Positions 911 to 34,705 of a stretch of DNA of 64,000 nucleotides are shown here, one piece after another. The stretch is from positions 434,001 through 498,000 of IMG/VR virus record IMGVR_UViG_3300034072_000758, one strand, 5' to 3'. A program made the position numbers and the translations under genes. The notes under the pieces are model-generated. The model saw only the letters and a list, made by a program, of their open reading frames with translations. It had not been told where the DNA came from and did no database searches. How positions within the stretch are numbered: the first letter of the stretch is position 1; each line of letters starts with the position of its first letter.

Positions 911-2245
911 TCACACGAACCAGTCGGTTCCTTCTTTTGTATCCAATAGGGTGACGCCGCGTTCGGCCAAAGCATTCCGAATGATGTCCGCCATGACCCA
1001 ATCTTTACCGGCTCTTGCCAGATTGCGGTCGTAGATCAGACCTTCGATGATTTCACGCTCGTCCTTAGACACATTCTTGAACCAATCCTCGTATCGATGA
1101 TTGAGGACACCAAGCAATTGCGCAGCCGCAACGAACTCGGACTTGGTTTCCGGCTTCATCAAACTGGATAATTCAGCCAGAGCCAAAGGCGTATTCAGAT
1201 CATCATGAAGATGATCGAGGAATGATTGTGGCACCGGAACTTCGTGCGTGGTGAGCTTTGCCGTCTGGCGCAGGAAGGCATAGTAGCCATCCAGCCGGTT
1301 CTTCGTGGTTTGAAGAAGTTCTGGGGTCCAATTCAAGACGGTTCTATAATGCGCTGAGAGCAACGCCAAGCGCACGATTTCCCCATCCCATTCCTTTACG
1401 AGATCGTGGACCAACACGACATTCCCTACCGACTTGGACATCTTGCCGTTATTGGTCAGGAACTCGTTATGCATCCAGTAGCGGGAATACTCGTGATTAT
1501 GGCCGCAATGACCTTGAGCACATAACCCCTGAGAGATTTCATTCTCATGGTGCGGAAAGGCCAAGTCTATACCCCCGCCATGAATGTCGATAGGAAGACC
1601 CAGATTGGCTTCAATCATGGCCGAGCACTCAATGTGCCAACCGGGGCGTCCAGCACCCCACGGACTTTCCCAAGCCGGTTCACCGGGCTTCGACGGTTTC
1701 CATAGTACGAAGTCTTTTTGGTCGCGCTTATACGACACCTCACCGATCCGGCTTTCGGCTTCGTCATCCGAACCATTGGAGAAAACACCATGATCCGGGT
1801 ATGAATCCACGTCAAACAAAACGTGACCTTCCGACACATACGCATGGCCGTTCTTGATCAGACGCACAATCATGTCGATCATGGCCGGGATATGGTTGGT
1901 CGCCAGAGGTTCAATGGGAGGCCGTAGGACGCCCACGGAGGCCATGTCTTGACGATATATGTCCGTGTAGCGTTCAGCAATAACCTTGTAGTCCACGCCC
2001 TCCTGAGAGGCTTTCTGGATGATTTTATCATCGATGTCGGTGATGTTCCGAGCATAGATGACATGGTTATTTCCATACTTGTGGCGGAGAACACGAAACA
2101 GCAAATCGAATACGACCGCTGGGCGGGCATTGCCGATATGTGCGTGATTATATACCGTAGGACCACAGACGTACATCGTAATCCGGTTAGGATTTCGAGG
2201 AACGAAAGTTTCTTTGGATCGAGTTTTGCTGTTGAATATCTTCAT
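911..2245 (-). CDS. cysS: cysteinyl-tRNA synthetase
   Basis: MYVCGPTVY, HIGN, RNITDIDDKII, GRPGWHIECSAM, DIHGGG.DL.FPHHENE, KMSKS; start set at MKIFNS by family N-terminus. Confidence 0.97.
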   Translation of the reverse strand: MKIFNSKTRSKETFVPRNPNRITMYVCGPTVYNHAHIGNARPAVVFDLLFRVLRHKYGNNHVIYARNITDIDDKIIQKASQEGVDYKVIAERYTDIYRQDMASVGVLRPPIEPLATNHIPAMIDMIVRLIKNGHAYVSEGHVLFDVDSYPDHGVFSNGSDDEAESRIGEVSYKRDQKDFVLWKPSKPGEPAWESPWGAGRPGWHIECSAMIEANLGLPIDIHGGGIDLAFPHHENEISQGLCAQGHCGHNHEYSRYWMHNEFLTNNGKMSKSVGNVVLVHDLVKEWDGEIVRLALLSAHYRTVLNWTPELLQTTKNRLDGYYAFLRQTAKLTTHEVPVPQSFLDHLHDDLNTPLALAELSSLMKPETKSEFVAAAQLLGVLNHRYEDWFKNVSKDEREIIEGLIYDRNLARAGKDWVMADIIRNALAERGVTLLDTKEGTDWFV

Positions 2246-2290
2246 AGATAAATTCCTAACATAACCAATGACTGTTGGCAACACTATGGC

Positions 2291-2318
2291 TTGACAATAT
2301 TAATTACCATGCTAGACT
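2291..2318 (+). promoter_or_regulatory. sigma70-type early promoter
   Basis: TTGACA-16 nt-TAGACT (GCTAGACT) upstream of the early ORF cluster; similar promoters at 7294, 12370, 21789, 26238, 33083, 41873. Confidence 0.7.
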
Positions 2319-2348
2319 AGAATTAGAAAATATTGGAGATTAGTTTAC

Positions 2349-2600
2349 ATGATGACCCTCGACATGGCTGAAATGGAATACGATTTGAGTAAGAAAGCCC
2401 TGACTTTCTACATGGATCGTGGCGAAGCTTGGCCAAGCGAAGTCGAAGTGGTATCGCATCATACGGGTCGTGTCATCCGTTTTGTTTACGATTTGGAACT
2501 GGCTCAACAAAATGATTTCTGGGACGGCGAACTGACCGCCTTAAAACCAACCGAAGAATGTAATGTGAAAACCCTCTGGCTGGTGCCGTGTTTCCGATGA
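2349..2600 (+). CDS. hypothetical protein
   Basis: GGAG RBS after promoter; first gene of a tightly packed operon. Confidence 0.7.
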   Translation: MMTLDMAEMEYDLSKKALTFYMDRGEAWPSEVEVVSHHTGRVIRFVYDLELAQQNDFWDGELTALKPTEECNVKTLWLVPCFR

Positions 2601-2920
2601 CTGATGCCGAATATGAAAAATTAGCTCGCCGGGTCGCACACCTTATGGGGGACGACGATGCGGCTGCAAAGAGCCTGTGGCGGATGGCTGCGGGCTGTCG
2701 AGAACGCGCTGTAGAAGTCGTCCGCGCCTTCGGACAACATCTTAGTGCCGGTCTGGCCAAAACTTTAATTGAGACCGATAATGATTTCTGCGATTATGTT
2801 TGCGCATATGTCATCAACGGTGGTCTTGAAGTCGAATGGTTGTATTGGAGCCGCGATGAATATGACGCCGATCATGATCTCAAAAGAATAGCCGCGATAG
2901 CCAAGAAAGCACTGATATGA
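2588..2920 (+). CDS. hypothetical protein
   Basis: Overlapping operon ORF; start may be ATG 2597. Confidence 0.65.
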   Translation: MFPMTDAEYEKLARRVAHLMGDDDAAAKSLWRMAAGCRERAVEVVRAFGQHLSAGLAKTLIETDNDFCDYVCAYVINGGLEVEWLYWSRDEYDADHDLKRIAAIAKKALI

Positions 2921-3213
2921 ATCAGCCATTGTACAAAGTAGTAATGCGGGCAGAAGAAATCAAAGATGGCTCAACCGTCACCAAAAAGACGGGTGAAGTT
3001 CAGTATACGTTCAAGAACAAATTGTCGCTGTACCAAACTCAAACCAAAGGGGAACCACCCATTCTTCCGGTCATTATCGAAGGATACTTCCTCGTTGGTG
3101 CTAGAGGACAAATCAATCAGATCAAAGGCGATCTGGAACTGATGATGACCATGACCGCCGAAGAGTTGTTGTGGTTTGCTCAAGAACTTTGTGATGAAGA
3201 GGAAGACAAATGA
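2917..3213 (+). CDS. hypothetical protein
   Basis: ATGA-coupled operon ORF. Confidence 0.65.
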   Translation: MNQPLYKVVMRAEEIKDGSTVTKKTGEVQYTFKNKLSLYQTQTKGEPPILPVIIEGYFLVGARGQINQIKGDLELMMTMTAEELLWFAQELCDEEEDK

Positions 3214-3392
3214 AATTTTGTGTGACGGCTGAAAACGATCAAGGTCTAACCTTTCAGGTTACATTCCATAATCCCAATTGGAATGGCGCAACGGCTGCTG
3301 CGCAGCGCGCCGTAAATAAGGCGGTGAAGGCCGATCCTTTCCATAAAAAGCATGGACCGTTCTTGGCCAAGAATATCGACGTGACAGCATGA
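3210..3392 (+). CDS. hypothetical protein
   Basis: ATGA-coupled operon ORF. Confidence 0.6.
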   Translation: MKFCVTAENDQGLTFQVTFHNPNWNGATAAAQRAVNKAVKADPFHKKHGPFLAKNIDVTA

Positions 3393-4159
3393 AGCGAATC
3401 AACCCCATAACCAATAGTGCGCAGGATAAGAGAGATTTTAAGATCAGAACGTTCTCTGATCTTAATCACTATCTCGACACGTTTTTGGGCGGGGAGATTG
3501 CGCGTTGTGCGAAGGCTACGGTCTTCTTCATGATTAATCGCATGTTGGATCAACCTGCCACCAAACCATTTAAACCCTTCACAATGGGTGATATTTTACG
3601 AGTGACCGGGGAAGACATCGATGTCGTGGTCCCTTCGACAAGCTGGCTTCAAAATCTCGACATTCTTGTGTTTGATCGGTCGATTGGTGACAATGATCCA
3701 ATCACCCTGAAATATAGCACTCTTTTTAAAGACTTATATCGAAATAACGATCTGGGCGCTGGGCCGAAACCAGTACCAACCCCACCTATTATCCCCCGGT
3801 TGTTGGCGGCAATTGATGGCACGGTTGACCACGAGCACAATGTCAGAGAAAAAGAAGATCGGGTATTTACTAAGACAATCCATCGTTTTCTTAATACCAA
3901 CAGACTTTTTCTTCAATACTCTCTGACCAAATGTGCCGGTAAAGAAGATAGTCATATATCCAATGATCGCAAACCAATGGTTGTTATTGAATTTATTCAT
4001 AGCTATGTTGGAATTATAGGACACACTTGGTTTACGGGCGCGGGCAAAGTATTAGCTCCCGAAACCAATGTTTATTACAAGGTTCGTCCCAAAAAAGGGT
4101 CTTCGCTCGAAGAGGCCGAAGAAGAACTTATGTTGCTGATGATGGAGGAAAGAATATGA
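3389..4159 (+). CDS. hypothetical protein with acidic-then-hydrophobic C-terminal motif
   Basis: 256 aa, ATGA-coupled; ends EEAEEELMLLMMEERI. Confidence 0.7.
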   Translation: MKRINPITNSAQDKRDFKIRTFSDLNHYLDTFLGGEIARCAKATVFFMINRMLDQPATKPFKPFTMGDILRVTGEDIDVVVPSTSWLQNLDILVFDRSIGDNDPITLKYSTLFKDLYRNNDLGAGPKPVPTPPIIPRLLAAIDGTVDHEHNVREKEDRVFTKTIHRFLNTNRLFLQYSLTKCAGKEDSHISNDRKPMVVIEFIHSYVGIIGHTWFTGAGKVLAPETNVYYKVRPKKGSSLEEAEEELMLLMMEERI

Positions 4160-4285
4160 AAATAGCTATGATTGTCGCGGCTATAGCTTTGTGCTATACC
4201 GGCAACAACACGACCAAAGAAACCACCGATCTTGAGAACGCGCAATGGGTTCAGGGTCTTATGAATATTTTGACTGCTGTGAAAT

Positions 4286-4984
4286 ATGAAACTCCGTCCG
4301 TTACGCGATGTGATTCTTGAAGGCTTAGGTGAGGCTTGGAAATATTATCCAAAGAACCTCGCCTTAAAGAAATGCTTTCAGATCATCGGTGAAATTGAAA
4401 GCTCCAAAAAGACGGGGTTCGATGACCTGTGCCAAGCCATACAATCTTTACCGGATGGCAGCATTAAAATTTCTCGTTGTCTCGACTATTACAAGACCGT
4501 AACTTTCGATCTTAACGCAGTAGAAAGCGGCGAGATCGATTTATATAGAGCTATGGTGGAAGATGACACTTGGCACTCTGTTTTTGATTTACACATGATT
4601 AAAAATCACGCCAGTATCATCCCAGCCCCATCGGTATCCAGAAAGCTGATTAATTTTGGGTATTGTCTTCATTGTTGTTTGAAGGCTACCACAACAAAAT
4701 ACGCAAGTATGTTATGTCGAGTTATAGAAGCGCTTTCGAACGAAAATTGGAAGATGTTTACTTACCATTGCCAACATGGCTATAACAACGGCATCCCGGC
4801 ATCAAGATCAATATTAAGCTGGCTGCGCTACGAGTATCAAGTAGGCCAGTATGGTCCCGATTACGATCTCTTAGCCGATGTTATAGCGATAATGGACCGG
4901 AACACTTCGTTGGCTATAGATAAATGGTTCGACCAATGCCTCATTGAGACGCGGGAGAGCGACCATAATGCAAGTGATAAATGA
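4286..4984 (+). CDS. hypothetical protein
   Basis: 232-aa ORF ending the + operon. Confidence 0.65.
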   Translation: MKLRPLRDVILEGLGEAWKYYPKNLALKKCFQIIGEIESSKKTGFDDLCQAIQSLPDGSIKISRCLDYYKTVTFDLNAVESGEIDLYRAMVEDDTWHSVFDLHMIKNHASIIPAPSVSRKLINFGYCLHCCLKATTTKYASMLCRVIEALSNENWKMFTYHCQHGYNNGIPASRSILSWLRYEYQVGQYGPDYDLLADVIAIMDRNTSLAIDKWFDQCLIETRESDHNASDK

Positions 4985-5390
4985 TCTCGTACTGCGGCGG
5001 CTCTATAAATTCTGGCTTAATAAAGACGGTGACGGCTTCATCAAAACTGGTTGATATGCTTTTCCGATTGACTGTTCGGAAAAGCATATAAGGATGAATC
5101 TTATTACCTTGGTCGATTTCGCGTTTCAACTCTGAGCGGATTTTGAGAATTGCGGTCGAATCATATAGATAATCCTGTCGTAACAAGATGCCATTTTCCA
5201 CGTCAAACCTGAACATTCTCGACATGGCTTGAACCGGGTCTTTGTGTCCAGCAAACATATTTACCGGGGCAGTCATAGGCTCATCAAACAAATCTTCTAG
5301 CTGATCAATAGGCATAATCTTGGCGCTGGAATATTGTAGCCTGAGATTTGCCATATTGATGTTTAATTTGTACGCGACGTATGAGGTCAT
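4941..5390 (-). CDS. hypothetical protein
   Basis: Start moved to MTSYV (5390), which gives an ATGA overlap with the upstream gene's stop. Confidence 0.6.
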   Translation of the reverse strand: MTSYVAYKLNINMANLRLQYSSAKIMPIDQLEDLFDEPMTAPVNMFAGHKDPVQAMSRMFRFDVENGILLRQDYLYDSTAILKIRSELKREIDQGNKIHPYMLFRTVNRKSISTSFDEAVTVFIKPEFIEPPQYEIIYHLHYGRSPASQ

Positions 5391-5608
5391 TGATAAGCAC
5401 CACTGGTAATGGACGCCAGAAGACGCATAACGGCCTCTGGATGCGTCTTCATTGCGTCGATGGGGCGAAGATACCCAAGGGCGCGTTTCTCGGTGTACGC
5501 CCATTCTTTAGCCCAAGAATCGATGTCGAAGTTCTTATGTTCGTCATCTTTGTCCGCATTTTCCCAGACCGCACGAGCTTGAGCTATGATTTGTTCAAGG
5601 TCAGTCAC
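5387..5608 (-). CDS. Xre/MbcA/ParS-type antitoxin C-terminal domain protein (DUF2384-like)
   Basis: W...EKRALGYLRPIDAMKT...VMRLLASITSGAYQ matches the family pattern W..P..ALG..RP.D...T......V..LL..I..G.Y. Confidence 0.7.
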   Translation of the reverse strand: MTDLEQIIAQARAVWENADKDDEHKNFDIDSWAKEWAYTEKRALGYLRPIDAMKTHPEAVMRLLASITSGAYQ

Positions 5609-5789
5609 GGAGCACCAATGGGGCTTCCGACGCTTGTTCTATGCGATACGCCTTCTCATGCCAGAACTCGAACATTTTAAGATCGTTCTTGGTCAAGGCG
5701 TGACGGAGTTCATCTATGTACCCTTGCCTCAACTCAGGAGGAAGGCTCATAAAATCGGCGACGGTTAATCTGAATGATAATGTGCTCAT
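5601..5789 (-). CDS. hypothetical protein
   Basis: 62 aa, overlaps the next gene of the minus operon. Confidence 0.55.
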   Translation of the reverse strand: MSTLSFRLTVADFMSLPPELRQGYIDELRHALTKNDLKMFEFWHEKAYRIEQASEAPLVLRD

Positions 5790-5869
5790 ATCACGAGCAT
5801 ATCAAAGATAGTTAATAAATGGCAATTTTAAAATTGATTTATCGAGACCATATTTGATATATTTACTAC

Positions 5870-6157
5870 ATGACAACAGATACAGATTTCCGAAAGATCA
5901 TCGCCGAAGCGTTCAAGAATGCTGACGCCAAACCAGAATATGAACGCGCCGAATACCTGATCAGGGAATTGACCGGCGTGATTGCTTTGAAGCCGGATTT
6001 GGAAAGCTTCAACGACTGTGTTATGGGGAATTTCAACATTCGCCTTGTGATGAATAGAGCCGAATGGTATACCCCCGCGTTACGAGTGTCTGAATACATG
6101 GCCGCGCTCTTTACCGAGACGGCTAGGATTAAAGACGAGTGGGAAAAGTCGGAATAA
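5870..6157 (+). CDS. hypothetical protein
   Basis: 95-aa ORF after an AT-rich promoter region. Confidence 0.65.
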   Translation: MTTDTDFRKIIAEAFKNADAKPEYERAEYLIRELTGVIALKPDLESFNDCVMGNFNIRLVMNRAEWYTPALRVSEYMAALFTETARIKDEWEKSE

Positions 6158-6249
6158 CTTTTCCACAGGTTTCAGTCCTTATTGTTATATTATGGTTGAC
6201 TTTGATACTAAATAGAATTATAGTCACCAAATAGACCGTAAGGTCATGT

Positions 6250-6325
6250 TCCTCGGTAGCTCAGTTGGTAGAGCGCCTGACTGTTAATCAGGATGTCACA
6301 GGTTCGAGTCCTGTCCGAGGAGCCA
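6250..6325 (+). tRNA. trnN: tRNA-Asn(GTT)
   Basis: TCCTCGG/CCGAGGA acceptor, CCTGA-CTGTTAA-TCAGG, GGTTCGAGTCC, encoded CCA. Confidence 0.95.
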
Positions 6326-6381
6326 TTAAAATTCGTGCGTTGTTTACCGCGTTGTAGCGGAGTAATAAATACGCACTATAT

Positions 6382-6453
6382 GGCCGATTAGCTCAGTGGT
6401 AGAGCGTCTCGTTTACACCGAGAATGTCGGGAGTTCGACCCTCTCATCGGCTA
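6382..6453 (+). tRNA. trnV: tRNA-Val(TAC), CCA not encoded
   Basis: GGCCGAT/ATCGGCT acceptor, TCTCG-TTTACAC-CGAGA; followed by CCATCC-TTCG-GATGG-TTTTCTT hairpin. Confidence 0.93.
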
Positions 6454-6538
6454 CCCATCCTTCGGATGGTTTTCTTTATATAAAAATAATTTTGCGGTTG
6501 CGAAATTATAAATAATGTATTAAGATGTCCTTAGATAT

Positions 6539-6610
6539 GCGGGTGTAACTCAGCGGTAGAGTGTCAGCCTTCCAAGCTGTTCGTCGCAGGTTCGATCCCT
6601 GTCACCCGCT
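6539..6610 (+). tRNA. trnG: tRNA-Gly(TCC), CCA not encoded
   Basis: GCGGGTG/CACCCGC acceptor, U73, TCAGC-CTTCCAA-GCTGT. Confidence 0.93.
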
Positions 6611-6629
6611 CTCTACAAAGGACATCAAG

Positions 6630-13479: not shown

Positions 13480-13486
13480 ATAAAGT

Positions 13487-24211: not shown

Positions 24212-24354
24212 TTTTCAAGTATGCCACATTTTCTTACTTAATCAAGAATTTCAACAAAATAAATCCCTTGCCCTCAGTTAACGTTAATGCTACGTTAACC
24301 ACAAATCTACATTGTGTGGATTGTGTCTGCCAGTAATCAGTAAGAGAGTAGAGT

Positions 24355-25710: not shown

Positions 25711-25733
25711 TTCACTCAACAAAGTGAATTTGT

Positions 25734-25761
25734 AAAGGCGGGGAGAAATCTCCGCCTTTTT
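25734..25761 (+). terminator. intrinsic terminator
   Basis: AAAGGCGGGGA-GAAA-TCTCCGCCTTTTT. Confidence 0.85.
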
Positions 25762-25898
25762 AATGTAAAAATACGGTTAAAAAATATCGTTAAAAAATAC
25801 GAATTAAATTGAATCTCCCAAAAACACTTGATACATTAGAGTTAACTTGATGACAGTCATCAAGCCTGTAACAAGCTAATCCAAGGATTAACAAGCAA

Positions 25899-26159
25899 AT
25901 GTCGAACATCGTACAAGAACTGAACAACGGCCTCGTGTCGGTTTCCTTCACCAAGGCTGACGGCTCGCTGCGCGCCATGAAGGCCACCCTGAGCACCAAC
26001 GTTTCGGAAGCCAAGGCTCTGATCGAAGCCGCTCAAGCCGCTGGCACCCTGAACACAACTCCTTCGGCTTCGGGCCAAATCTCGGTCGTTGAAGTCACCG
26101 ACGCTGGTGTCGCTCAATGGCGCTCGCTGAATGTCAACACGGCGAAGATCACCGCCTAA
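25899..26159 (+). CDS. small SH3/Sm-like beta-barrel phage protein (DUF2693-like)
   Basis: V.VSFTKADGSLR.M.ATL ... QWRS motif; AAGGA RBS. Confidence 0.7.
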   Translation: MSNIVQELNNGLVSVSFTKADGSLRAMKATLSTNVSEAKALIEAAQAAGTLNTTPSASGQISVVEVTDAGVAQWRSLNVNTAKITA

Positions 26160-26198
26160 TTGACAAGAAAGTCTTTCCTAGACTTCATGTTAAAACTC

Positions 26199-26229
26199 AA
26201 AGACTCTCGGTATTCCGAGGGTCTTTTTT
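26199..26229 (+). terminator. intrinsic terminator
   Basis: AAAGACTCTCGG-TATT-CCGAGGGTCTTTTTT. Confidence 0.85.
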
Positions 26230-26297
26230 ATGTTTACTTGACATCAACATATTCTGTGATACTATAGGTTCATAAAATATAATCTAGGAGCTTACAT

Positions 26298-26888
26298 ATG
26301 ACTGATGAACGCCGAGTATCAAATATCGAATTTTGTATATCTCGCATGGAAAAGGAATGTCAAATCTTCCAAGCGGCTGGTACTAATCTGACCCCGGCTC
26401 ACCTTCTTCAAGTCATGATCAAGGCCGAGGTCTATGATTATTCGCTGATCGTCACGTCGCGCACCGGCAAGGCTTCTGGTTTCAAAGTCACCGTCGATAG
26501 TTCGGTTGACATGCGCCTGATCTACAACATCAATTTCAAGAATGACGTTTTCGATCTCAAGCTGGACATGATGGATACCAAAGATATGAAGGTGACCACC
26601 ACGAACAGCCAAGGCGACGATGTGACGGAAATTCGCAGTGTGCGTATCCTGTATTTTGTCAACAAGCTGGATCGTCATTCAGAGCGTCATCACCGGGATG
26701 CCATCAATATCGCCATGTCGATGTTCGATGAAGACGTGAACCGCGATGATCGCCACACCATTCGCCTTCTGGAACGAGTTCGTTCCTATACCAATCCTCA
26801 ATCGGCGGTCGGCGAAGAAAAGCGTAGCCAGTGGGTTGGCTCTAACGGCGAACGTTTCGAGAAACACAAAGGAAAGAGGATCGCATGA
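26298..26888 (+). CDS. hypothetical protein
   Basis: AGGAG RBS after the promoter at 26238. Confidence 0.7.
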   Translation: MTDERRVSNIEFCISRMEKECQIFQAAGTNLTPAHLLQVMIKAEVYDYSLIVTSRTGKASGFKVTVDSSVDMRLIYNINFKNDVFDLKLDMMDTKDMKVTTTNSQGDDVTEIRSVRILYFVNKLDRHSERHHRDAINIAMSMFDEDVNRDDRHTIRLLERVRSYTNPQSAVGEEKRSQWVGSNGERFEKHKGKRIA

Positions 26889-27052
26889 AATCGGACGCAT
26901 ACAAAGAGGGCTACGACTACTGTGGTCATCATGGGCCAAACTTTCAAGCCAACCCATATCCCAAAGGCTCTCAGGAAGCCGAGGATTGGCGTGATGGGGT
27001 TTGGCGCTGTGTCAACGAAGACGACGCCGAACATCGCGGAAGGGGCGGCTAA
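26885..27052 (+). CDS. ribosome modulation factor (Rmf)-like protein (55 aa, not in ORF track)
   Basis: AYKEGY..CG.......NPY......EDWRDGVW matches the GY.AG......PY......W..GW pattern; coupled to both neighbours. Confidence 0.55.
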   Translation: MKSDAYKEGYDYCGHHGPNFQANPYPKGSQEAEDWRDGVWRCVNEDDAEHRGRGG

Positions 27053-27318
27053 TGAAGATCGTTCTGGAACAGCTTCCTAACTACCAAATGGTCACGCATG
27101 GTGGCGATTTCCTCGCGCGGCGTTTCGCCATTCTGATCAACGATGTTGTCGTTGACGAGTTCATGGAACGGGGTGCGCCCCACTACTATGTATCCACCAT
27201 GTTCGAAAAGCTTATTCGTGATCGGATCGGCGTCTACGAACTGGCTCTCGGTATCAAAGCCGAAGAAATAGTCATCACACCAGCCGAAGAGTTTAGAAAA
27301 TGGAGGAATTTTCAATGA
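27052..27318 (+). CDS. hypothetical protein
   Basis: TAATG-coupled start MKIVLEQ. Confidence 0.6.
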   Translation: MKIVLEQLPNYQMVTHGGDFLARRFAILINDVVVDEFMERGAPHYYVSTMFEKLIRDRIGVYELALGIKAEEIVITPAEEFRKWRNFQ

Positions 27319-27515
27319 TGGGTTACACCAAAGCCACCGATTTCATGCGTGATAATGTGTCGGGTAATCTGGTCAAGCGTGGCGATACGACCAAGAGTGG
27401 CGGGCTGGTTTACTATATGGAAACCGGCCCCGCATATCGTCTGTCCGCTAAGGAAGCGGAAGTCCTCGGACGATACAACTTTCGCCCCCGTTTCGTAGAA
27501 GGAGCTACCAAGTGA
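27315..27515 (+). CDS. hypothetical protein
   Basis: GGAGG RBS before ATG 27315. Confidence 0.55.
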   Translation: MMGYTKATDFMRDNVSGNLVKRGDTTKSGGLVYYMETGPAYRLSAKEAEVLGRYNFRPRFVEGATK

Positions 27516-27844
27516 TCGTCATGAACCAATATTTCTTTCTGGGGCCGAACGCGATCATTCATAACTTCTATGATCCAGAAATCCAAACGGCGGCTCAGAT
27601 GTCTCGCGGCATGGCCATCGAACTCGGTGAAGTTCCCCCGGCCTACAGCGAAGACCCGATCATTGTCACGCCTGATGCGTATATCGCTAAGAACGAGTTC
27701 GACCGCGATGACTTGTTCTTCGGCGATACTAACTTCGTCCCCGAATATCTTCTGTGGGAAGGTGGCGACGGTAAGACTTACGTGGTTCACATCAAGGACT
27801 GCTATCGAGCCACCGACATGGTTTGTATGGGTCTTCTGAATTAG
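27512..27844 (+). CDS. hypothetical protein
   Basis: GTGA-coupled operon end. Confidence 0.6.
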   Translation: MIVMNQYFFLGPNAIIHNFYDPEIQTAAQMSRGMAIELGEVPPAYSEDPIIVTPDAYIAKNEFDRDDLFFGDTNFVPEYLLWEGGDGKTYVVHIKDCYRATDMVCMGLLN

Positions 27845-28896
27845 AAGTCGGCCTTCGGCTTCAATACCTGTGACAAATTCTGACGCTGTTTGATTTCATA
27901 TCCATCACGGAACGTAGTCATCTTGTCGTTCGACAGGTAGTCTTTCAGGATGCGGTGCGCAGCTTCCCACTCGTATTCGCGGTACGCCACTTCCTTGATC
28001 TTCCAAGCGCTGCTAACGCGCTGGAACAGGGTTGATGGCATGTAGTCGGTACGCAGGAAGAAATCGCCTTCCTGAGCCACGTCTGGGAACGCATGACCAG
28101 AACCAATCAGTTGAGCACCATTAGGCGGAATGCCATCACCCGCAAAAATCCAAGGGTTCTGTAAACCATCCTCAGAACCGGGGATGTAGTAGAACTGCTG
28201 GGTTTCGAAGTTTCTACGAATGAAATTCGCCTTGGCGTTCTCAACGACTTGTTCGTTGATCTCGAACTCCTTAGTCGCGGTGGATAGAATGTCTCCCAGA
28301 GTGTCGGATGTATCCAACCCAAATGGATCGGTGGCCTGTTTATCCAAAATATCTTGGTATTCCTGAGAGGCCGTCATGGGCTTCACTTGGATACGCCATA
28401 TGTGAGGATACCAAGTAGACGAATAACCATCAGCGGCCTTGTCGGCTTCCTTCACGACATAAAACTTGTTGGCTGGCTTCGCGGTCGGTGAGGTGTTATC
28501 GCGGCGGTGTGGAAGCTCTATAACGTCCCCGGCGATGATACGACGACCAAGACGGGCGATCAGATCATTTAGATGGAACTCAATAAACAGCGTATCGGAC
28601 TCAAACATCATCCCGAACTGAGACAAACTGAAATCCGTCTCGTCGTTGATTTGATAGATACCGCGTGTCTCATACACGGTATCCGAATATTTTCTATCGC
28701 GGTTTTCCAAGTATAACGGGTCTTGAATACTGGTAATATTCGTGACGGTTGAGTTAGACGTTTGGTCGTACACACCTTCATATAGGTGAACATATACCGC
28801 AGTACCAGACACCGTGAAAAATTCCGAGATCACCCTATCGGAGAACTTGAAATCGTTTCCTTTTTTACCACTATTCCAGAGAGTTATACGAGCCAT
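27841..28896 (-). CDS. neck/head-closure protein (T4 gp14-like)
   Basis: LENRDRKY, FSLSQFG, DTLFIEFH, LGRRII.GDVIELPH, WYPHIWR; full TATAAATA late promoter. Confidence 0.7.
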   Translation of the reverse strand: MARITLWNSGKKGNDFKFSDRVISEFFTVSGTAVYVHLYEGVYDQTSNSTVTNITSIQDPLYLENRDRKYSDTVYETRGIYQINDETDFSLSQFGMMFESDTLFIEFHLNDLIARLGRRIIAGDVIELPHRRDNTSPTAKPANKFYVVKEADKAADGYSSTWYPHIWRIQVKPMTASQEYQDILDKQATDPFGLDTSDTLGDILSTATKEFEINEQVVENAKANFIRRNFETQQFYYIPGSEDGLQNPWIFAGDGIPPNGAQLIGSGHAFPDVAQEGDFFLRTDYMPSTLFQRVSSAWKIKEVAYREYEWEAAHRILKDYLSNDKMTTFRDGYEIKQRQNLSQVLKPKADF

Positions 28897-28967
28897 ATTT
28901 GTATTTATATTGAAGAAAACCCCCGAACGTGTTATCTAAATATAGCATTGTTCGGAGACTGGCGCTC

Positions 28968-29345
28968 GTGCCAAAGGTTTATCAAAATTTGTCTGGCACG
29001 ACAAAAGACTCTTTTAAGATCGGCAAGAACGGTCCTGAAATCATTCGTGGATACGGAGAGCCAGAGGTCGAAGCTACAAATGGTAGTCTATACGTCGATC
29101 AAACCGATGGTGAACTTTATCAATATAAAAAAGACGAATGGGTTCTCCTGTCCAAGGACTACGCGAGCTTCCATTATCTGTCCCTGTTGGCCCAGCACGA
29201 GACGATCCAGCACATAGCCACTCTCATGTGTCAGGCAAAAGAAAAGAGCCAATTCCCGTGGAAAGTGACTCTTACTTTATTCGGACTATTTGCCGCGTTT
29301 GCGATCCCCGGCGTGATCCTTATCTGGTTATTCTTTCCCGACTAA
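28968..29345 (+). CDS. membrane-anchored paralog of the 48531..48965 N-terminal domain
   Basis: GGAG RBS then GTG; VYQNLSGTT.D.F.IGK.GP..; C-terminal TM helix. Confidence 0.6.
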   Translation: MPKVYQNLSGTTKDSFKIGKNGPEIIRGYGEPEVEATNGSLYVDQTDGELYQYKKDEWVLLSKDYASFHYLSLLAQHETIQHIATLMCQAKEKSQFPWKVTLTLFGLFAAFAIPGVILIWLFFPD

Positions 29346-30605
29346 CCATTCACCCGGAAGATCATAATTGTCGATGATCTTCTTGTTCATGTCGCCATAC
29401 AGGCTGATCGACGGCTTGCGATTGATCAGATCATTGTGGAACGCCTGAACCTGTTCGCGGGACGTGCGTTCAGCTTCTTCGAGGATTCCGCCCACGTTAT
29501 CGTAGCTTCGGCCTTCATCGAACATGTCGGCCAGAACGAATTGCATCAGTTCGCCGTATTCTTCATCGACCTTGGAAATTTCCACAAGGGCCTTATTCTT
29601 CGCCAGCGTCCAGTCGGCATCGGTGATACCGTTTTCGGCGATGGTGCGCAGCGTTTTACCGATGGCGATAAAGCATTTCTTGAGGTTCTTTTTCGTCGTT
29701 TCGAACGCGATGACAAAGAGTTCCGTATCGTTGGAATAGTGGGCGCTGACATGGTAGCACAGACCCAACTTCTCGCGTACTTCAACGAACAGAGGCGACG
29801 ACATGCCACCAGACAGAACATCGGTGAGAAGATAGGACAGAACGCGCTCGTCACGCTTTACCGGAAAGGCGATGCGACCCTTAACCGAACCCTTCGGGGG
29901 AGACGGAATAACGACTGTGCCACCCACGTATTCCGCCTTTTCAGTCGGAACCTTTTGGCCTTGAGGCAGCTTCATGACGTGGCTGGCTTTCACCTTTTTC
30001 ACGAACTCGTCATGATCGACATTACCACCACAGAACACGATCATGTTCTGGGTGAAATAGTTGGCCTTGTGATAGACCGCCAGATCGTCTTCGACGTTGA
30101 TATTTGTGATGGTTTCTTCCGTGCCGAGCGTTTCGCGGCCCAGAGCGCTGCCGGGATATGCCGCCGCTTTCAGGCCGTTGTAGACCATCTTGCCGCCATT
30201 GGTTTGGGTCATGGCGAACTCTTGGAGGATGACATCGCGTTCCTTCTCGATTTTGTTGAAAGCGATGTTGGTCACCATGTCGGTGAGAAGGTCGAGCGAA
30301 TTATCCACAAACTTACCGAGACCTTCCACGAAATAAACCGTGTGGCGGGCCGAGGTGTACGCATTGAAGGACGAGCCGAGCGATTCGATTTCGGATGAAA
30401 TAGCGAACGAATCTTCCCGGTTGGAAGTACCGTTAAACATCATGTGTTCGAGGAAGTGAGCGGTGCCTTGCTTTACGTCATTTTCATCACTGGAACCAGC
30501 GTTGACGGCGACCGCAACAAGCGAAGAGTGAGTTTGCCTTTGAGCGGTGATGACCGTTAGGCCATTGTCGAGGACGGTGGTTCTGATGTTTGTGTAAAAT
30601 GACAT
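29328..30605 (-). CDS. M16 family (pitrilysin-like) zinc peptidase
   Basis: LDNGL.V, V.AGS.DE...G.AHFLEHMMFNGT (HXXEH), FNAYTS, GGMSSPLF.EVREKLGLCY. Confidence 0.93.
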   Translation of the reverse strand: MSFYTNIRTTVLDNGLTVITAQRQTHSSLVAVAVNAGSSDENDVKQGTAHFLEHMMFNGTSNREDSFAISSEIESLGSSFNAYTSARHTVYFVEGLGKFVDNSLDLLTDMVTNIAFNKIEKERDVILQEFAMTQTNGGKMVYNGLKAAAYPGSALGRETLGTEETITNINVEDDLAVYHKANYFTQNMIVFCGGNVDHDEFVKKVKASHVMKLPQGQKVPTEKAEYVGGTVVIPSPPKGSVKGRIAFPVKRDERVLSYLLTDVLSGGMSSPLFVEVREKLGLCYHVSAHYSNDTELFVIAFETTKKNLKKCFIAIGKTLRTIAENGITDADWTLAKNKALVEISKVDEEYGELMQFVLADMFDEGRSYDNVGGILEEAERTSREQVQAFHNDLINRKPSISLYGDMNKKIIDNYDLPGEWLVGKE

Positions 30606-30738
30606 ATTCGCTCCATGTAACTAAATCAACGCATATACTATCATAAAAATCTTTCAAGTCAACATTTTATATTTGCTTATCCACATCCAATGATGATAGA
30701 AAAATATGGTTAATTTTGTGTAAAGGATTATCCGCGTA

Positions 30739-31269
30739 ATGGGTACTCGTCATTTGGTGGTTGTTCGCTTGAACAATGAAGTAAAAGTCGCTCAGTATGG
30801 TCAATTCGACGGTTATATGAGCGGGGCTGGTAGAACAATACAACGTATTTTGTCGTTTGCTGATTTGAATTTGCTAAAAGAGTTAGTAGCAAAATGTTGG
30901 TGGATCACAGATGATGAACACAACAAGATGATGGCTGATCTTGGTGTCAAAAGTAATGACGGTTGGATTAGCTTGGATGACAGTAAAAAAATTGAAAAAG
31001 CTTATCCGCATCTTCATCGCAATTGTAGCGCCGAAGTCATCACTGAAATTCTCAACAGCGAAAACGGATTACCGCTTCAAAATTCATACGATTTTGGAGA
31101 AGATGGACTTTTTTGCGAATACACCTATACGGTCGATCTCGACAATGATACATTGACCGCACAAAGCGGGGGTTTGGACGGCAAAGTCCTTTTCCAAGGA
31201 CCAATCAACACGCTCCACACAATCCCACCATTTGAAGACCCCAAAGACGAAGAAGAAGACGAAGAATGA
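30739..31269 (+). CDS. conserved phage hypothetical protein (MGTR family)
   Basis: MGTRH...[12 protein letters not shown] and LFCEY.Y.VDLD motifs. Confidence 0.7.
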
Positions 31270-33047
31270 CCAAGACAAACATGCGAACGCAAACCTGTGG
31301 TGAATTGACCGTGGCCTATACTGGCGACACGGTGAGCCTGTGTGGCTGGATTCACCGCAAGCGAGATCATGGCGGCTTGCTGTTCATCGACTTACGTGAC
31401 AATTACGGACTGACCCAGATCGTAATGCAAAAGACCGCTGCCTGTTTCTCGGTGGTGGAGCACCTTCGCCAAGAAAGCGTAATTCGCGTAATCGGTAAGG
31501 TCGTAACGAGAACGGAAAATACACAAAACCCGAACCTCGCAACCGGGCAGATCGAAGTCATCGCTTCGGAAATTACAGTTCTGTCGGAAGCCTCGGAACT
31601 TCCAGTGCCAGTGTTCGGTGATGTTCAGTATCCAGAAGACCAACGTTTGAAGCATCGCTATCTCGATCTTCGCCGTGACGAACTCCACTCAAACATCCTG
31701 CTGCGCTCCAAGATCATTAGCTACCTGCGTAGGTTCATGGAGGGCGAAGGCTTTACTGAGTTTCAGACGCCTATTCTGACCGCATCTTCCCCAGAAGGCG
31801 CGCGCGACTTCCTCATTCCATCACGCCTTCATCCCGGCAAATTTTATGCCCTGCCTCAAGCACCACAACAATTCAAGCAACTTTTGATGGTGTCTGGCTT
31901 TGACCGCTATTTCCAGATCGCACCTTGCTTCCGCGACGAAGCCGCCCGTGCTGACCGGTCGCCGGGTGAGTTCTATCAACTCGATATTGAAATGTCTTTC
32001 GTCAATCAGGAAGACGTTTTCTCTCAGGCTGAACGTATCCTTCATTCGACCTTTACTGAGTTCTCGAACGGGAAGACCGTAAGTTCGTACCCATTCCAGC
32101 GAATCACCTACAAGGACTCGATGGAAAAATACGGCAACGATAAGCCCGATCTTCGTAACCCAATCGTCATGAGCGATGCTTCGCTTTATTTCGTGAACGG
32201 CGGCTTCGGTCTGTTTGAGAAAATGGCCAGCGACGGCAAAAGCTCGATCTGGGCTATTCCGGTCAAGGGCAATGGAAACATCAATCGCAAATTCTGCGAC
32301 AAGATGAACTCTTGGGCCATCGAAGAAGGCCAAAAAGGTATGGGATATATCTATTGGAACGAAGAAGGCGCACAAGGCCCAATCGCCAAGAATCTCCATG
32401 CCGATAAGCTGGGACAATTGGAAGCCGCCTATGAATTGGGTAACGGTGATGCCATATTCTTCGTGGCCGGGATCAAAAAGGATTTCCTCAAGTTCTGCGG
32501 ATTCGCCCGCACCAAGATCGCCGAAGAACTCGGTCTGATCAAGGATGATCATTTCCATTTCTGCTGGGTGGTGGATTTCCCAATGTTCGAACTATCGAAC
32601 GAAGGCAAAATCGATTTCGCCCACAATCCGTTCTCTATGCCACAAGGCGAAATGGAAGCTCTGGAAACCAAGAACCCGCTGGATATTCTGGCCTATCAGT
32701 ACGACATCGTGTGTAACGGCATCGAACTGTCCTCCGGGGCTATTCGTAACCACCGACCCGACATCATGCTCAAGGCTTTTGAAATCGCTGGTTACAAGGC
32801 CGAGGAAGTGGAAGAACGCTTCGGCGGTATGTTGAACGCATTCCGCTATGGCGCGCCTCCCCACGGTGGTCTGGCTCCCGGTGTTGACCGCATGGTCATG
32901 ATGCTGGCTAATAAATCCTCCATCCGAGACATCATCGCTTTCCCGCTGAATCAGCAAGGACAAGATTTGATGATGAACGCACCATCGGAAGTCACGGATA
33001 AACAACTCAAAGAGTTGAACATCCGAACATACAAGCCATTGAGCTAA
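31266..33047 (+). CDS. aspS: aspartyl-tRNA synthetase, probably non-discriminating
   Basis: [55 protein letters not shown]; His in RDHGG is the ND-type residue. Confidence 0.97.
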
Positions 33048-33148
33048 TCTTGGAGGGTCGCTTGAAAAAGCGGCCCTTTCTATTGACATACTAAGAAGAT
33101 ATGATATGTTGTTAGTAAGACAACATTATATTATTAGGAGATTTACAT

Positions 33149-33478
33149 ATGACTGACCGCGAAGCGAATGCCCTGAAAATCATTCAACACAAGATTGATC
33201 AATTCGTTCTAATTCTTGAAGCTGCTAATCGCCAAATGATCGCGGCTATGTCGGAAAAAACTGGTCACATGCCGGAAATCTTAGTCTACGAAATCAAGAA
33301 AGCCAATGACTACATTCTCTACGGCGAGGAAGTCGTTAAGTGGTTCAATGACGGCAAGACCAAGGAAGAGGTCTTGGCGATGATCAACCAATTCTTCATC
33401 GACTACCATATGGGCTGGTCGAACAAGCCGAAGGAATGCTGTGAAGTGATGGCGGCTATCGCTTGCGCCATCAAGTAA
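33149..33478 (+). CDS. hypothetical protein
   Basis: AGGAG RBS after the promoter at 33083. Confidence 0.65.
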   Translation: MTDREANALKIIQHKIDQFVLILEAANRQMIAAMSEKTGHMPEILVYEIKKANDYILYGEEVVKWFNDGKTKEEVLAMINQFFIDYHMGWSNKPKECCEVMAAIACAIK

Positions 33479-34705
33479 TTACAGCCACACTTTCCCATAT
33501 GCTGATTGAAGAATAGACGGGATGAACACTTTACCACCTTCGTCCTGATAGTTTTCCAGAACAGCCAACAAAGTTCTACCAACCGCCAGTCCAGACCCAT
33601 TTAAGGTGTGGACTGGTTCTTTTTTGCCTTGAGCATTGGTGAAGCGAGTCTTCATGCGATTGGCTTGGAAATCGCCACAATTGGATACCGAGCTAATCTC
33701 ACGATAAGTTTTCTGTGATGGCACCCAAACTTCGATGTCGTAAGTCTTTTGTGCTCCGAAGCCCATGTCACCCGCGCATAATAACATGATGCGATATTTT
33801 ATACCCAATGAAGTGAGGATGTTTTCAGCACAAGATAACATGAACTCGTGCTCTTGTGCCGACTTCTCAGGCGTAGTGATCGACACCATTTCAACTTTGT
33901 TAAATTGATGCTGGCGTAAGATGCCATGCGTGTCCTTACCAGCGCTTCCGGCTTCGGATCGGAAACATGGGGTCAGCGCAGTTAGACGAAGGGGTAATTC
34001 ACCCTCAGCCAAAATCTTATCAGCGACATAATTTGTCAAAGTCACTTCGGCGGTCGGGATCAGAAAATGTTCATCAGTGTTCACCGAGTACAGGTCATCG
34101 ATGAATTTAGGAAGCTGACCAGTTCCATACAAGGCCGTGTCTTTCACCAGCAACGGAGTGGAGCATTCCTCGAATCCATTTTTAACCTGACATTCAAGCA
34201 TATACTGCCCGATAACTCGTTCGAGACGTGCCACGGGGCCGCGCATGAATGAGAAGCGTGTGCCAGACATCGCTACCCCCGCTGATATATCGAGGCCGTA
34301 TTTGCTCCCGATCTCAACATGGTCTTTCGGGTCTTTTATGGAACGGAGCGGAATATCATTGACACGAACCAATTGATTGTCGTGCTCGTCTTTTCCAACC
34401 GGAACGTCATTGGCTGGGACATTTGGGATGTCGAACAAATAGTCTTCAAGTTCCCCGGCCAGATAATCGACCAAGCCTTCGGCAGTAGTTATTTCGGCCT
34501 TCACCGCCACCCCGGTTTCATGGTCTTTATTCCGCGCGGCATCCTTGCGCTTGGCGTACAAAGCCTCAAGATCAGTCAACGATTTACGATGATCTGTATC
34601 CTTTTTGAGAATGTCCGAAACTATCCGAGACCCGTCAAGCCCTCTCTTATTCAACCCGCTGGCAACGGCTTCTGGATTCTCGCGGATGGTCTTTATATTG
34701 ATCAT
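33479..34705 (-). CDS. serS: seryl-tRNA synthetase
   Basis: N-terminal coiled arm, LIPTAEV.LTN, FRSEAGSAGKDT.GILRQHQFNKVE, YREISS.SNC.DFQA.R, TLNGSGLAVGRT. Confidence 0.97.
   Translation of the reverse strand: MINIKTIRENPEAVASGLNKRGLDGSRIVSDILKKDTDHRKSLTDLEALYAKRKDAARNKDHETGVAVKAEITTAEGLVDYLAGELEDYLFDIPNVPANDVPVGKDEHDNQLVRVNDIPLRSIKDPKDHVEIGSKYGLDISAGVAMSGTRFSFMRGPVARLERVIGQYMLECQVKNGFEECSTPLLVKDTALYGTGQLPKFIDDLYSVNTDEHFLIPTAEVTLTNYVADKILAEGELPLRLTALTPCFRSEAGSAGKDTHGILRQHQFNKVEMVSITTPEKSAQEHEFMLSCAENILTSLGIKYRIMLLCAGDMGFGAQKTYDIEVWVPSQKTYREISSVSNCGDFQANRMKTRFTNAQGKKEPVHTLNGSGLAVGRTLLAVLENYQDEGGKVFIPSILQSAYGKVWL

What the first reader, a model, noticed from the sequence alone, without database searches (positions are those of the whole stretch)
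911..34705. Three full-length aminoacyl-tRNA synthetases (Cys, Asp, Ser), none matching the window's tRNA isotypes directly
Seen: intact cysS (911), aspS (31266) and serS (33479). The tRNAs here are Thr, Asn, Val, Gly, Leu, Arg, Lys and Trp. The RDHGG His in AspRS suggests a non-discriminating enzyme that could charge the phage tRNA-Asn via host GatCAB. Established: aaRS genes are rare in phages and typical of giant eukaryotic viruses. Inference: the phage is backing up host translation, or these enzymes serve the atypical long-arm tRNAs.
Basis: partly seen in the sequence, partly recalled or inferred. Interest (0 to 1): 0.6.

Follow-up and report, generated by a model that had tools for sequence, protein, structure and literature searches.

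The report
Three tRNA synthetases in huge phage
A 517-kb bacteriophage genome carries intact genes for the enzymes that load cysteine, aspartate and serine onto tRNAs. They were captured long ago from Caulobacter-like bacteria, which is a documented habit of huge phages and not a new kind of system.

Summary
cysS (911-2245, minus strand), aspS (31266-33047, plus) and serS (33479-34705, minus) are full-length. Each scores above NCBI's equivalog cut-off and keeps its catalytic motifs.

The window is bases 434,001-498,000 of IMG/VR contig UViG_3300034072_000758 (516,805 bp). This is a huge phage distantly related to Agrobacterium phage Atu_ph07 and Sinorhizobium phage Phosso.

The genes are not host contamination:
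- Their GC3 is 51-60%, against 96% for a Phenylobacterium aspS.
- A virion-protein / M16 peptidase / aspS / serS block recurs in a second phage contig.
- AspRS falls in a clade of seven viral sequences (four on contigs of 240-578 kb) nested among Caulobacteraceae.
- CysRS falls in a four-member clade (the members checked are phage-like) sister to Caulobacterales.

The tRNA "mismatch" is partly a window-edge effect. Two tRNA-Asp(GUC) genes lie 8.6 kb upstream of the window. I found 36 tRNAs for 15 amino acids in the ~106 kb I could reach. None was Ser or Cys, and 80% of the genome was not seen.

The RDHGG histidine matches the Pseudomonas non-discriminating AspRS. It is invariant in Caulobacteraceae, so it is inherited, not a phage adaptation.

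Huge phages were already reported to carry up to 15 synthetases (Al-Shayeb 2020). This is a new member of a known kind, of modest interest.

The parts
911..2245 (-). cysS, class I cysteinyl-tRNA synthetase, 444 aa (the ORF runs to a GTG at 2284)
   Evidence: TIGR00435 454.5 bits. Aligns end to end with Coxiella (3TQO) and E. coli (1LI5) CysRS. HIGN, KMSKS and the Zn ligands are present. Start at 2245.
31266..33047 (+). aspS, bacterial-type class II aspartyl-tRNA synthetase with GAD insertion, 593 aa; probably non-discriminating (Asp/Asn)
   Evidence: NF001750 821.8 bits. Best PDB match is the P. aeruginosa Asp/Asn ligase 4WJ3. Motifs 1-3 intact; 306 of 353 host-invariant columns kept.
33479..34705 (-). 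serS, class II seryl-tRNA synthetase, 408 aa, with a coiled-coil arm 14 residues shorter at its tip than in bacterial relatives
   Evidence: TIGR00414 443.3 bits. Motifs 2 and 3 intact; 7+7-residue gaps in the arm. Long branch in the trees.
30739..31269 (+). 176-aa ORF of unknown function whose stop overlaps the aspS start by 4 nt (probably co-transcribed)
   Evidence: No Pfam or PHROG hit. Not conserved with the ORF at the same position in L001.
27841..28896 (-). virion structural protein, 2.4 kb upstream of aspS; shows the synthetases sit among phage genes
   Evidence: phrog_11591, E 5.5e-85. 75% identical to its syntenic counterpart in phage contig L001.
29328..30605 (-). M16 (insulinase-type) peptidase, a conserved neighbour of aspS
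   Evidence: Pfam PF00675 and PF05193. Same position in L001.
639..6611 (+). 3' part of tRNA array 1: Thr(GGU), then cysS on the opposite strand, then Asn(GUU), Val(UAC), Gly(UCC). The array continues 9.7 kb upstream of the window and there includes two tRNA-Asp(GUC).
43414..45406 (-). tRNA array 2: Trp, Lys x4 (two with long variable arms), Leu x5, Arg x4, plus a 117-nt tRNA-like gene

Best explanation
These are three functional, canonical aminoacyl-tRNA synthetases that belong to a huge (at least 517 kb) tailed phage.

Origin. The genes came from Caulobacterales-type alphaproteobacteria, the probable host lineage. They have since been inherited vertically within a group of huge phages and now have phage-like base composition.

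Role during infection (inferred). They raise or safeguard the cell's capacity to charge tRNA.
- AspRS charges tRNA-Asp, of which the phage encodes two copies.
- AspRS is probably of the non-discriminating type, so it also charges tRNA-Asn (two phage copies) with Asp. Host GatCAB then converts that Asp to Asn.
- CysRS and SerRS act on host tRNA-Cys and tRNA-Ser, and on phage copies if any lie in the unseen 80% of the genome.

Shown here: gene integrity, conserved motifs, phage context, phylogeny and amelioration. Inferred: enzymatic activity, the substrate tRNAs, and the benefit to the phage.
For: Integrity:
- All three score above the equivalog cut-offs.
- HIGN (identical in all Caulobacterales CysRS), KMSKS, Zn ligands, and class II motifs 1-3 are intact.
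- 81-87% of columns invariant in bacterial relatives are retained, against 55-68% overall identity.

Phage context:
- UvsX, UvsY, a gp32-like SSB, RNR, tail fibre and several virion proteins flank the genes.
- The nearest cultured relatives are Atu_ph07 and Phosso, at about 41% identity.
- The contig is IMG/VR UViG_3300034072_000758, 516,805 bp.

Not a chimera:
- aspS has GC 50.8% and GC3 59.9%. A Phenylobacterium aspS has 67.5% and 95.8%.
- The virion-protein / M16 / aspS / serS block is conserved in an independent contig, L001.

Phylogeny:
- AspRS: seven viral rows, four of them on contigs of 240-578 kb, form a clade (97/97) nested with Caulobacteraceae (98/95).
- CysRS: a four-row clade (100/99; the members checked are phage-like) is sister to Caulobacterales (joint support 99/96).
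- SerRS: window plus L001 are sisters (96-99) and group with Caulobacterales in two of three trees.

Substrates: two tRNA-Asp and two tRNA-Asn (U1-A72, G73) lie on the same contig.

Against: - There are no biochemical or expression data.
- No tRNA-Ser or tRNA-Cys was found in the ~106 kb examined.
- The tRNA-binding modules have diverged more than the catalytic cores. The window-to-bacteria identity, divided by the bacteria-to-bacteria identity, is 0.58 for the CysRS anticodon domain and the SerRS arm, against 0.78-0.91 for the cores. SerRS also has a shortened arm and a very long branch. Substrate range may therefore be altered or relaxed.
- One of the two sequence proxies for non-discrimination is not met (Asn where P. 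aeruginosa has Gly).
- The host is inferred only from gene phylogeny. SerRS placement is unstable with wider sampling.
Confidence: 0.6

Rival explanations
1. Specialised pairs. The phage synthetases have co-evolved with phage-encoded tRNA variants and mainly charge those, giving the phage a partly private decoding channel.
For: tRNA-recognition domains diverge disproportionately in all three enzymes. The phage encodes at least 36 tRNAs, including two Asp and two Asn. Al-Shayeb et al. proposed exactly this.
Against: No phage tRNA-Ser or tRNA-Cys was seen in the 20% of the genome examined. The phage tRNA-Asp and tRNA-Asn carry ordinary bacterial features: G73, a GUC or GUU anticodon, and G1-C72 or U1-A72. 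Faster divergence of peripheral domains is also what relaxed constraint would give.
Confidence: 0.15
2. Counter-defence or host-shutoff insurance. The phage copies replace host synthetases that are inhibited, degraded or no longer made. Causes could be abortive-infection toxins, aaRS-targeting antibiotics such as microcin C (AspRS) or albomycin (SerRS), or the phage's own shutoff of the host. The targets of microcin C and albomycin are from my own knowledge.
For: The same genome region carries other translation-rescue and RNA-repair genes: a PTH2 peptidyl-tRNA hydrolase, an RlaP-type RNA-repair nucleotidyltransferase, a ligase-like ORF, ribosomal protein S21, and four tRNA-Lys genes.
Against: This is purely contextual. 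No known defence system targets these three enzymes together, and nothing in the sequences indicates inhibitor resistance.
Confidence: 0.15
3. Assembly chimera or host contamination: the synthetases are bacterial genes mis-joined to phage DNA.
For: Closest cellular homologues are 55-68% identical Caulobacterales proteins. Each window protein is recorded on a single contig only.
Against: GC3 is 51-60%, against 96% in a Caulobacteraceae aspS. Phage structural and replication genes lie on both sides. Synteny with the virion protein recurs in contig L001 from another sample. The neighbouring tRNA array was recovered identically in a separate Logan assembly. Phage-specific clades appear in all three trees.
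Confidence: 0.02
4. Decaying or moonlighting genes: the proteins no longer aminoacylate tRNA, being either relics or recruited to a non-translational role.
For: SerRS has a very long branch (1.1 substitutions per site against a median of 0.15-0.33) and a truncated arm.
Against: There are no frameshifts or stops. Catalytic motifs and 81-87% of invariant columns are kept. The genes have been retained across deeply diverged phages.
Confidence: 0.05

Closest known systems
Aminoacyl-tRNA synthetases of huge phages (Al-Shayeb et al. 2020, Nature; PMC7162821)
   Same: [quoted passage not shown] CysRS, SerRS and AspRS are annotated in that paper's supplementary genomes.
   Different: This contig is an uncharacterised IMG/VR genome related to Atu_ph07 and Phosso. 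I did not find it among the published sets, and I did not search them exhaustively.
Caulobacteraceae AspRS annotated Aspartate--tRNA(Asp/Asn) ligase, and the P. aeruginosa non-discriminating AspRS (PDB 4WJ3)
   Same: Bacterial type with a GAD domain. The RDHGG motif is identical. 67-69% identity to Phenylobacterium, Brevundimonas and Caulobacter. 4WJ3 is the best PDB hit.
   Different: The window has Asn at the position of P. aeruginosa G82. The anticodon-binding OB domain is only 60% identical to the Caulobacteraceae enzymes, which are 80% identical among themselves. It is encoded by a virus, and its activity is untested.
CysRS of Sinorhizobium phage Phosso (PV764938, 469 kb) and of many IMG/VR contigs of 150-608 kb
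   Same: Full-length cysS in cultured and uncultured jumbo phages of Alphaproteobacteria and other hosts.
   Different: Only 41-47% identical. In the tree they form at least three other clades. The window's CysRS belongs to its own four-member clade next to Caulobacterales, so cysS was captured several times.
aaRS sets of giant eukaryotic viruses (Mimivirus, Klosneuvirus, Tupanvirus; from my own knowledge)
   Same: Large viruses acquiring host-type synthetases piecemeal.
   Different: A different virus realm and eukaryotic-type enzymes, with no homology of context. This is an analogy only.

Membership tests
Cysteinyl-tRNA synthetase (class I; TIGR00435 equivalog) | Whole-protein score above the curated equivalog cut-off | tested here: met
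   454.5 bits against a cut-off of 340.
Cysteinyl-tRNA synthetase (class I; TIGR00435 equivalog) | HIGH-type and KMSKS signature motifs; zinc ligands equivalent to E. coli C28, C209, H234 and E238 (numbering from my own knowledge) | tested here: met
   HIGN (the same variant in all nine Caulobacterales sequences aligned), KMSKS, and the CGPTVY, HIEC and HGGG..HHENE blocks are conserved.
Cysteinyl-tRNA synthetase (class I; TIGR00435 equivalog) | C-terminal anticodon-binding domain present | tested here: met
   The alignment runs to residue 455 of 457 against 3TQO. The domain is only 38% identical to Caulobacterales, and Pfam DALR_2 and CysS_C are not detected.
Bacterial-type aspartyl-tRNA synthetase (NF001750 equivalog) | OB-fold anticodon domain, class II core with motifs 1-3, and GAD insertion | tested here: met
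   821.8 bits against a cut-off of 443. PF01336, PF00152 and PF02938 all hit. Motifs conserved.
Non-discriminating AspRS (Asp/Asn ligase) | Charges tRNA-Asn nearly as well as tRNA-Asp | not testable with these tools
   Needs aminoacylation kinetics or the E. coli trpA34 suppression assay (PMC4206432).
Non-discriminating AspRS (Asp/Asn ligase) | His at the P. aeruginosa H31-equivalent position (Leu in E. coli) | tested here: met
   RDHGG aligns with the RDHGG of 4WJ3, where E. coli has RDLGS. It is invariant in Caulobacteraceae. The role of this residue is from my recollection of Bernard et al. 2006, which I did not retrieve.
Non-discriminating AspRS (Asp/Asn ligase) | Gly at the P. aeruginosa G82-equivalent position (Lys in E. 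coli) | tested here: not met
   The window has Asn and the Caulobacteraceae have Glu or Asp. This proxy evidently does not hold in this lineage.
Non-discriminating AspRS (Asp/Asn ligase) | Cellular relatives work in genomes that lack AsnRS and use GatCAB | not tested
   Annotation-level evidence only: UniRef names the Phenylobacterium and Brevundimonas homologues Asp/Asn ligases. Phage tRNA-Asn has the U1-A72 pair that GatCAB requires (PMC2330236).
Bacterial seryl-tRNA synthetase (TIGR00414 equivalog) | Class II core with motifs 2 and 3 and serine-binding residues | tested here: met
   443.3 bits against a cut-off of 301.65. Motifs conserved against 2DQ3 and 6HDZ.
Bacterial seryl-tRNA synthetase (TIGR00414 equivalog) | Full-length N-terminal coiled-coil arm that reads the tRNA-Ser variable arm | tested here: inconclusive
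   The arm is present (PF02403, E 1.7e-10). It lacks 7+7 residues at the hairpin tip and is 34% identical to relatives. The related phage L001 has a different, 10-residue gap.
Huge-phage translation gene repertoire (Al-Shayeb 2020) | Phage genome over 200 kb with many tRNAs, host-related aaRS and other translation genes | tested here: met
   516,805-bp contig. At least 36 tRNAs. Three aaRS. Ribosomal protein S21 and PTH2 nearby. Virion and T4-like replication genes.

The most novel reading that the evidence does not exclude
The fast-evolving phage SerRS, with its shortened coiled-coil arm, may have been retuned to serve the phage's own odd class-II-like tRNAs. These are the two long-variable-arm tRNAs with Lys anticodons (43842-43932 CUU; 44446-44530 UUU) and perhaps the 117-nt tRNA-like gene at 45205-45321. 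SerRS ignores the anticodon and reads the variable arm (PMC9976931), and these tRNAs have G1-C72 and G2-C71. Such a pairing would put Ser at some Lys codons, or create a dual-identity or decoy tRNA. That would be a viral counterpart of allo-tRNAs and nev-tRNAs. The evidence does not exclude this. Against it: U73, a short 3-bp variable stem followed by four unpaired bases, and an acceptor stem and T arm identical to the ordinary phage tRNA-Lys(CUU).
Probability: 0.04. Interest if true: 0.85.

Novelty: new member of a known kind. Interest (0 to 1): 0.3.

Why it matters
This adds a well-documented case to the picture that huge phages carry parts of the translation apparatus. One AspRS lineage, captured from a Caulobacteraceae-like bacterium, has persisted through deep divergence in a clade of viral contigs that includes four of 240-578 kb.

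The phage encodes both tRNA substrates (Asp and Asn) of a probably non-discriminating AspRS. That gives a concrete, testable case of a virus feeding the host's indirect, GatCAB-dependent asparagine pathway.

In all three enzymes the tRNA-binding modules have diverged faster than the catalytic cores. This is a measurable hint about what selection acts on. None of it changes current concepts.

Tried and rejected
1. Host-phage chimera. Rejected on GC3, flanking phage genes, conserved synteny in L001 and phage-specific clades.

2. HIGN in CysRS as a sign of inactivation. Rejected, because all Caulobacterales CysRS have HIGN.

3. Near-identical phage in GenBank. Megablast of 30000-36000 against 50,697 phage records found nothing. 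Many tblastn 'phage' hits for aspS, cysS and serS (Listeria, Staphylococcus, Ralstonia, Acinetobacter MD-2021a records) look like bacterial fragments and were ignored.

4. Search for tRNA-Cys and tRNA-Ser.
   - I walked the contig with the search for related loci, the DNA search and the look-up of encoding contigs from about 410 kb to 515.9 kb. The furthest-upstream ~10 kb came from a separate Logan assembly assumed colinear with the contig.
   - None was found.
   - One look-up with a guessed ORF failed.

5. Conserved partner ORFs. The small ORFs flanking aspS are not homologous between the window and L001, and have no family hits.

6. Promoter and terminator scan around aspS and serS gave no more sites than shuffled sequence.

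7. Exact-match search for the odd D-arm of the long-arm tRNA-Lys in IMG/VR found only this contig.

8. SerRS donor. With 80 named genomes the phage pair left Caulobacterales with weak support. With a cleaned 47-row set it returned to them (94). I treat the donor order for SerRS as probable, not settled.

Full report
**Observation**

The window holds three long ORFs at the coordinates given: 911-2284 (minus), 31266-33047 (plus) and 33479-34705 (minus).
- Pfam and NCBIfam identify them as CysRS (TIGR00435, 454.5 bits, cut-off 340), bacterial-type AspRS with OB-fold and GAD domains (NF001750, 821.8 bits, cut-off 443) and SerRS (TIGR00414, 443.3 bits, cut-off 301.65).
- The real cysS start is probably the ATG at 2245. 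It follows an AGGA, homologues begin there, and the database gene call is 444 aa.
- ARAGORN and Rfam agree on 18 tRNAs in the window, for Thr, Asn, Val, Gly, Trp, Lys, Leu and Arg.

**What the window is**

The genes surrounding the synthetases are phage genes.
- They include UvsX, UvsY, a gp32-like SSB, a ribonucleotide reductase, a tail fibre and several virion structural proteins. One virion protein (27841-28896) lies only 2.4 kb from aspS.
- The SSB is about 41% identical to those of Agrobacterium phage Atu_ph07 (490 kb) and Sinorhizobium phage Phosso (469 kb). No close DNA match exists among GenBank phages.
- The window is bases 434,001-498,000 of IMG/VR contig UViG_3300034072_000758. The same record is JGI Ga0310127_000012, 516,805 bp.
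- Just outside the window the contig encodes a PTH2-type peptidyl-tRNA hydrolase, ribosomal protein S21, a sigma-70 factor and a ClpX-like ATPase.

**Are the enzymes intact?**

- CysRS aligns end to end with solved CysRS structures. It keeps KMSKS and the zinc-binding blocks. Its HIGN motif is the same variant found in every Caulobacterales CysRS aligned, so it is not a defect.
- AspRS keeps motifs 1-3 and the aspartate- and ATP-binding residues seen in the alignments to 4WJ3 and 1EQR.
- SerRS keeps motifs 2 and 3.
- Of the columns invariant in the bacterial relatives, the window proteins retain 306 of 353 (Asp), 176 of 216 (Cys) and 140 of 168 (Ser). Overall identities are 68, 56 and 55%. This is the pattern expected under purifying selection on function.

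**Origin, and why this is not a chimera**

- Among 5.8 billion proteins the best cellular matches of all three enzymes are Caulobacterales:
  - AspRS: 67-69% to Phenylobacterium, Brevundimonas and Caulobacter.
  - CysRS: 56-57% to Asticcacaulis.
  - SerRS: 52-55% to Caulobacter and others.
- Base composition is phage-like. aspS has GC 50.8% and GC3 59.9% (cysS 50.4/57.4; serS 48.1/51.3), within the range of the phage core genes. A Phenylobacterium aspS has GC 67.5% and GC3 95.8%.
- An independent 10.8-kb contig (L001, GCA_040384245.1) carries the same block: virion protein (75% identical), a small ORF, M16 peptidase, aspS (71%) and serS (55%, inverted).
- AspRS tree (careful search). The window and L001 join five other viral sequences, four of which sit on contigs of 240, 415, 417 and 578 kb. 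The clade has support 97/97 and is nested with Caulobacteraceae (98/95).
- CysRS tree. The window groups with three metagenomic sequences (100/99; those checked are phage-like). This clade is sister to Caulobacterales (99/96). Other huge-phage CysRS form at least three separate clades.
- SerRS tree. The window and L001 are sisters on very long branches. They group with Caulobacterales in two trees (92, 94) but not in the widest one.
- Conclusion: these are old captures from a Caulobacterales-like lineage, followed by vertical descent in phages.

**The tRNA question**

Reading outward from the window changes the picture.
- The first tRNA array continues for 9.7 kb upstream and holds 18 more tRNAs. 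Two of them are tRNA-Asp(GUC), 8.6-8.7 kb before window base 1. There is also a second tRNA-Asn.
- In total I found 36 tRNAs for 15 amino acids. One further tRNA-like gene was detected by Rfam only.
- Another 10 kb upstream (read from a separate Logan assembly that carries the same genes) and 18 kb downstream hold no tRNAs.
- Ser, Cys, Tyr, His and Glu tRNAs were not seen. About 410 kb of the contig was out of reach, so their absence is not established.
- The 'mismatch' is therefore false for Asp and undecided for Cys and Ser.

**Non-discriminating AspRS**

- The His of RDHGG aligns with the His of the P. aeruginosa Asp/Asn ligase, where E. coli has Leu.
- The motif is invariant in all Caulobacteraceae homologues, some of which UniRef names Asp/Asn ligases. 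The feature was inherited with the gene.
- At the second position that I recall as a determinant (P. aeruginosa G82, E. coli Lys), the window has Asn and the bacterial relatives Glu or Asp. That proxy does not carry over.
- Both phage tRNA-Asn have U1-A72 and G73. U1-A72 is the element GatCAB recognises (PMC2330236).
- The route phage AspRS, then Asp-tRNA-Asn, then host GatCAB is therefore plausible but untested.

**Divergence pattern**

Relative to divergence among Caulobacterales themselves, the window enzymes' tRNA-binding modules have changed more than their catalytic cores. The ratios below are window-to-bacteria identity divided by bacteria-to-bacteria identity.
- CysRS anticodon domain 0.58, against 0.84 for the core.
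- SerRS arm 0.58, against 0.78 for the core.
- AspRS OB domain 0.75, against 0.84-0.91 for the core.

The SerRS arm also lacks 7+7 residues at its tip, and L001 has a different 10-residue gap. This fits either relaxed constraint or adaptation to phage tRNAs. It cannot distinguish between them.

**Comparison with what is known**

- Al-Shayeb et al. reported tRNA synthetases in many phages over 200 kb, up to 15 per genome. They described them as related to but distinct from host enzymes, and suggested they charge phage tRNA variants (PMC7162821). Their supplementary genomes include CysRS, SerRS and AspRS.
- Cultured jumbo phages also carry such genes. Phosso has a CysRS, and PhiMa05 has several annotated aaRS genes.
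- In IMG/VR, cysS occurs on more than 15 contigs of 150-608 kb, and aspS on at least five contigs of 240-608 kb besides this one. One 415-kb contig has the same Cys/Asp/Ser trio.
- The statement that aaRS are rare in phages does not hold for this size class.

**Verdict**

This is a real, well-supported feature and a new member of a known kind. Its interpretation is partly right: the origin and the likely non-discriminating type hold, while rarity, the tRNA mismatch and the link to long-arm tRNAs are overstated. Interest is modest (0.3). The speculative link between the altered SerRS and the long-arm Lys-anticodon tRNAs is not excluded, but I consider it unlikely (about 4%).

Noticed in passing
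window 43842-43932 (-) and 44446-44530 (-): Two tRNAs with Lys anticodons (CUU, 91 nt; UUU, 85 nt) have a class-II-like long variable arm of 19 and 15 nt with a 3-bp stem. They share an identical unusual D-arm region, with three bases between the acceptor and D stems. Their acceptor stems differ by compensatory changes. The CUU copy shares its acceptor stem and T arm with the ordinary tRNA-Lys(CUU) at 44546-44622. Possible roles: variants that escape tRNA-Lys-cleaving defences, or tRNAs of altered identity.
   Followed up: partly
window 45205-45321 (-): A 117-nt tRNA-like gene missed by ARAGORN (Rfam tRNA, 34.8 bits). It folds with a 7-bp anticodon stem, a 6-nt loop (AUUAGA) and a structured variable arm of about 44 nt. 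ARAGORN in intron mode calls it tRNA(UUA) with a 24-nt intron.
   Followed up: partly
L002 (JBINOA010003469.1, GCA_043956695.1, bases 868,514-889,887): The CysRS 63% identical to the window's lies on a 1,136,180-bp contig. The 21 kb I read is phage-like: GC 41%, many small ORFs, T4_Y16D, and NAD-salvage genes. This could be a phage genome over 1 Mb, a concatemer or a mis-assembly.
   Followed up: no
L006, L009, L011, L012, L014, L032 (IMG/VR contigs of 159-465 kb): In a separate huge-phage CysRS clade, cysS is followed 0.6-1.2 kb downstream by a suppressor tRNA(CUA). In L006 and L012, the two loci I compared, the ORF between them is homologous to window ORF 42701-43102, which itself lies next to tRNA-Trp.
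   Followed up: no
L092:176-703 (contig ~420.3 kb, 13.7 kb upstream of the window); L115:5487-5720 (contig ~501 kb, 3 kb downstream): The phage also encodes a PTH2-type peptidyl-tRNA hydrolase just before the tRNA array. Beyond the window's end it encodes ribosomal protein S21, next to a ClpX-like ATPase, a sigma-70 factor and RNase H.
   Followed up: partly
window 37918-38934 (+) and 11743-12366 (+): An RlaP-family RNA-repair nucleotidyltransferase and an ORF with an ATP-dependent ligase domain. Together with the four tRNA-Lys genes, these suggest tRNA repair or evasion of anticodon nucleases.
   Followed up: no
window 22063-30605: A slightly GC-richer block of bacterial-type genes lies beside the synthetases: glutamine-dependent NAD synthase NadE (22063-23820), an SPFH/band-7 protein (24355-25710) and an M16 peptidase (29328-30605).
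   Followed up: no
window 54378-57023 (-): The ribonucleotide reductase large subunit matches its PHROG family in two stretches (residues 2-421 and 501-880). The roughly 80-residue unmatched segment between them may be an insertion.
   Followed up: no
IMGVR_UViG_3300050120_000230 (415 kb; L015, L085, L108): Another huge phage carries the same Cys/Asp/Ser synthetase trio. Its AspRS (63% identical) is in the window's AspRS clade, but its CysRS and SerRS fall in different clades. This suggests gene replacement or independent capture.
   Followed up: partly
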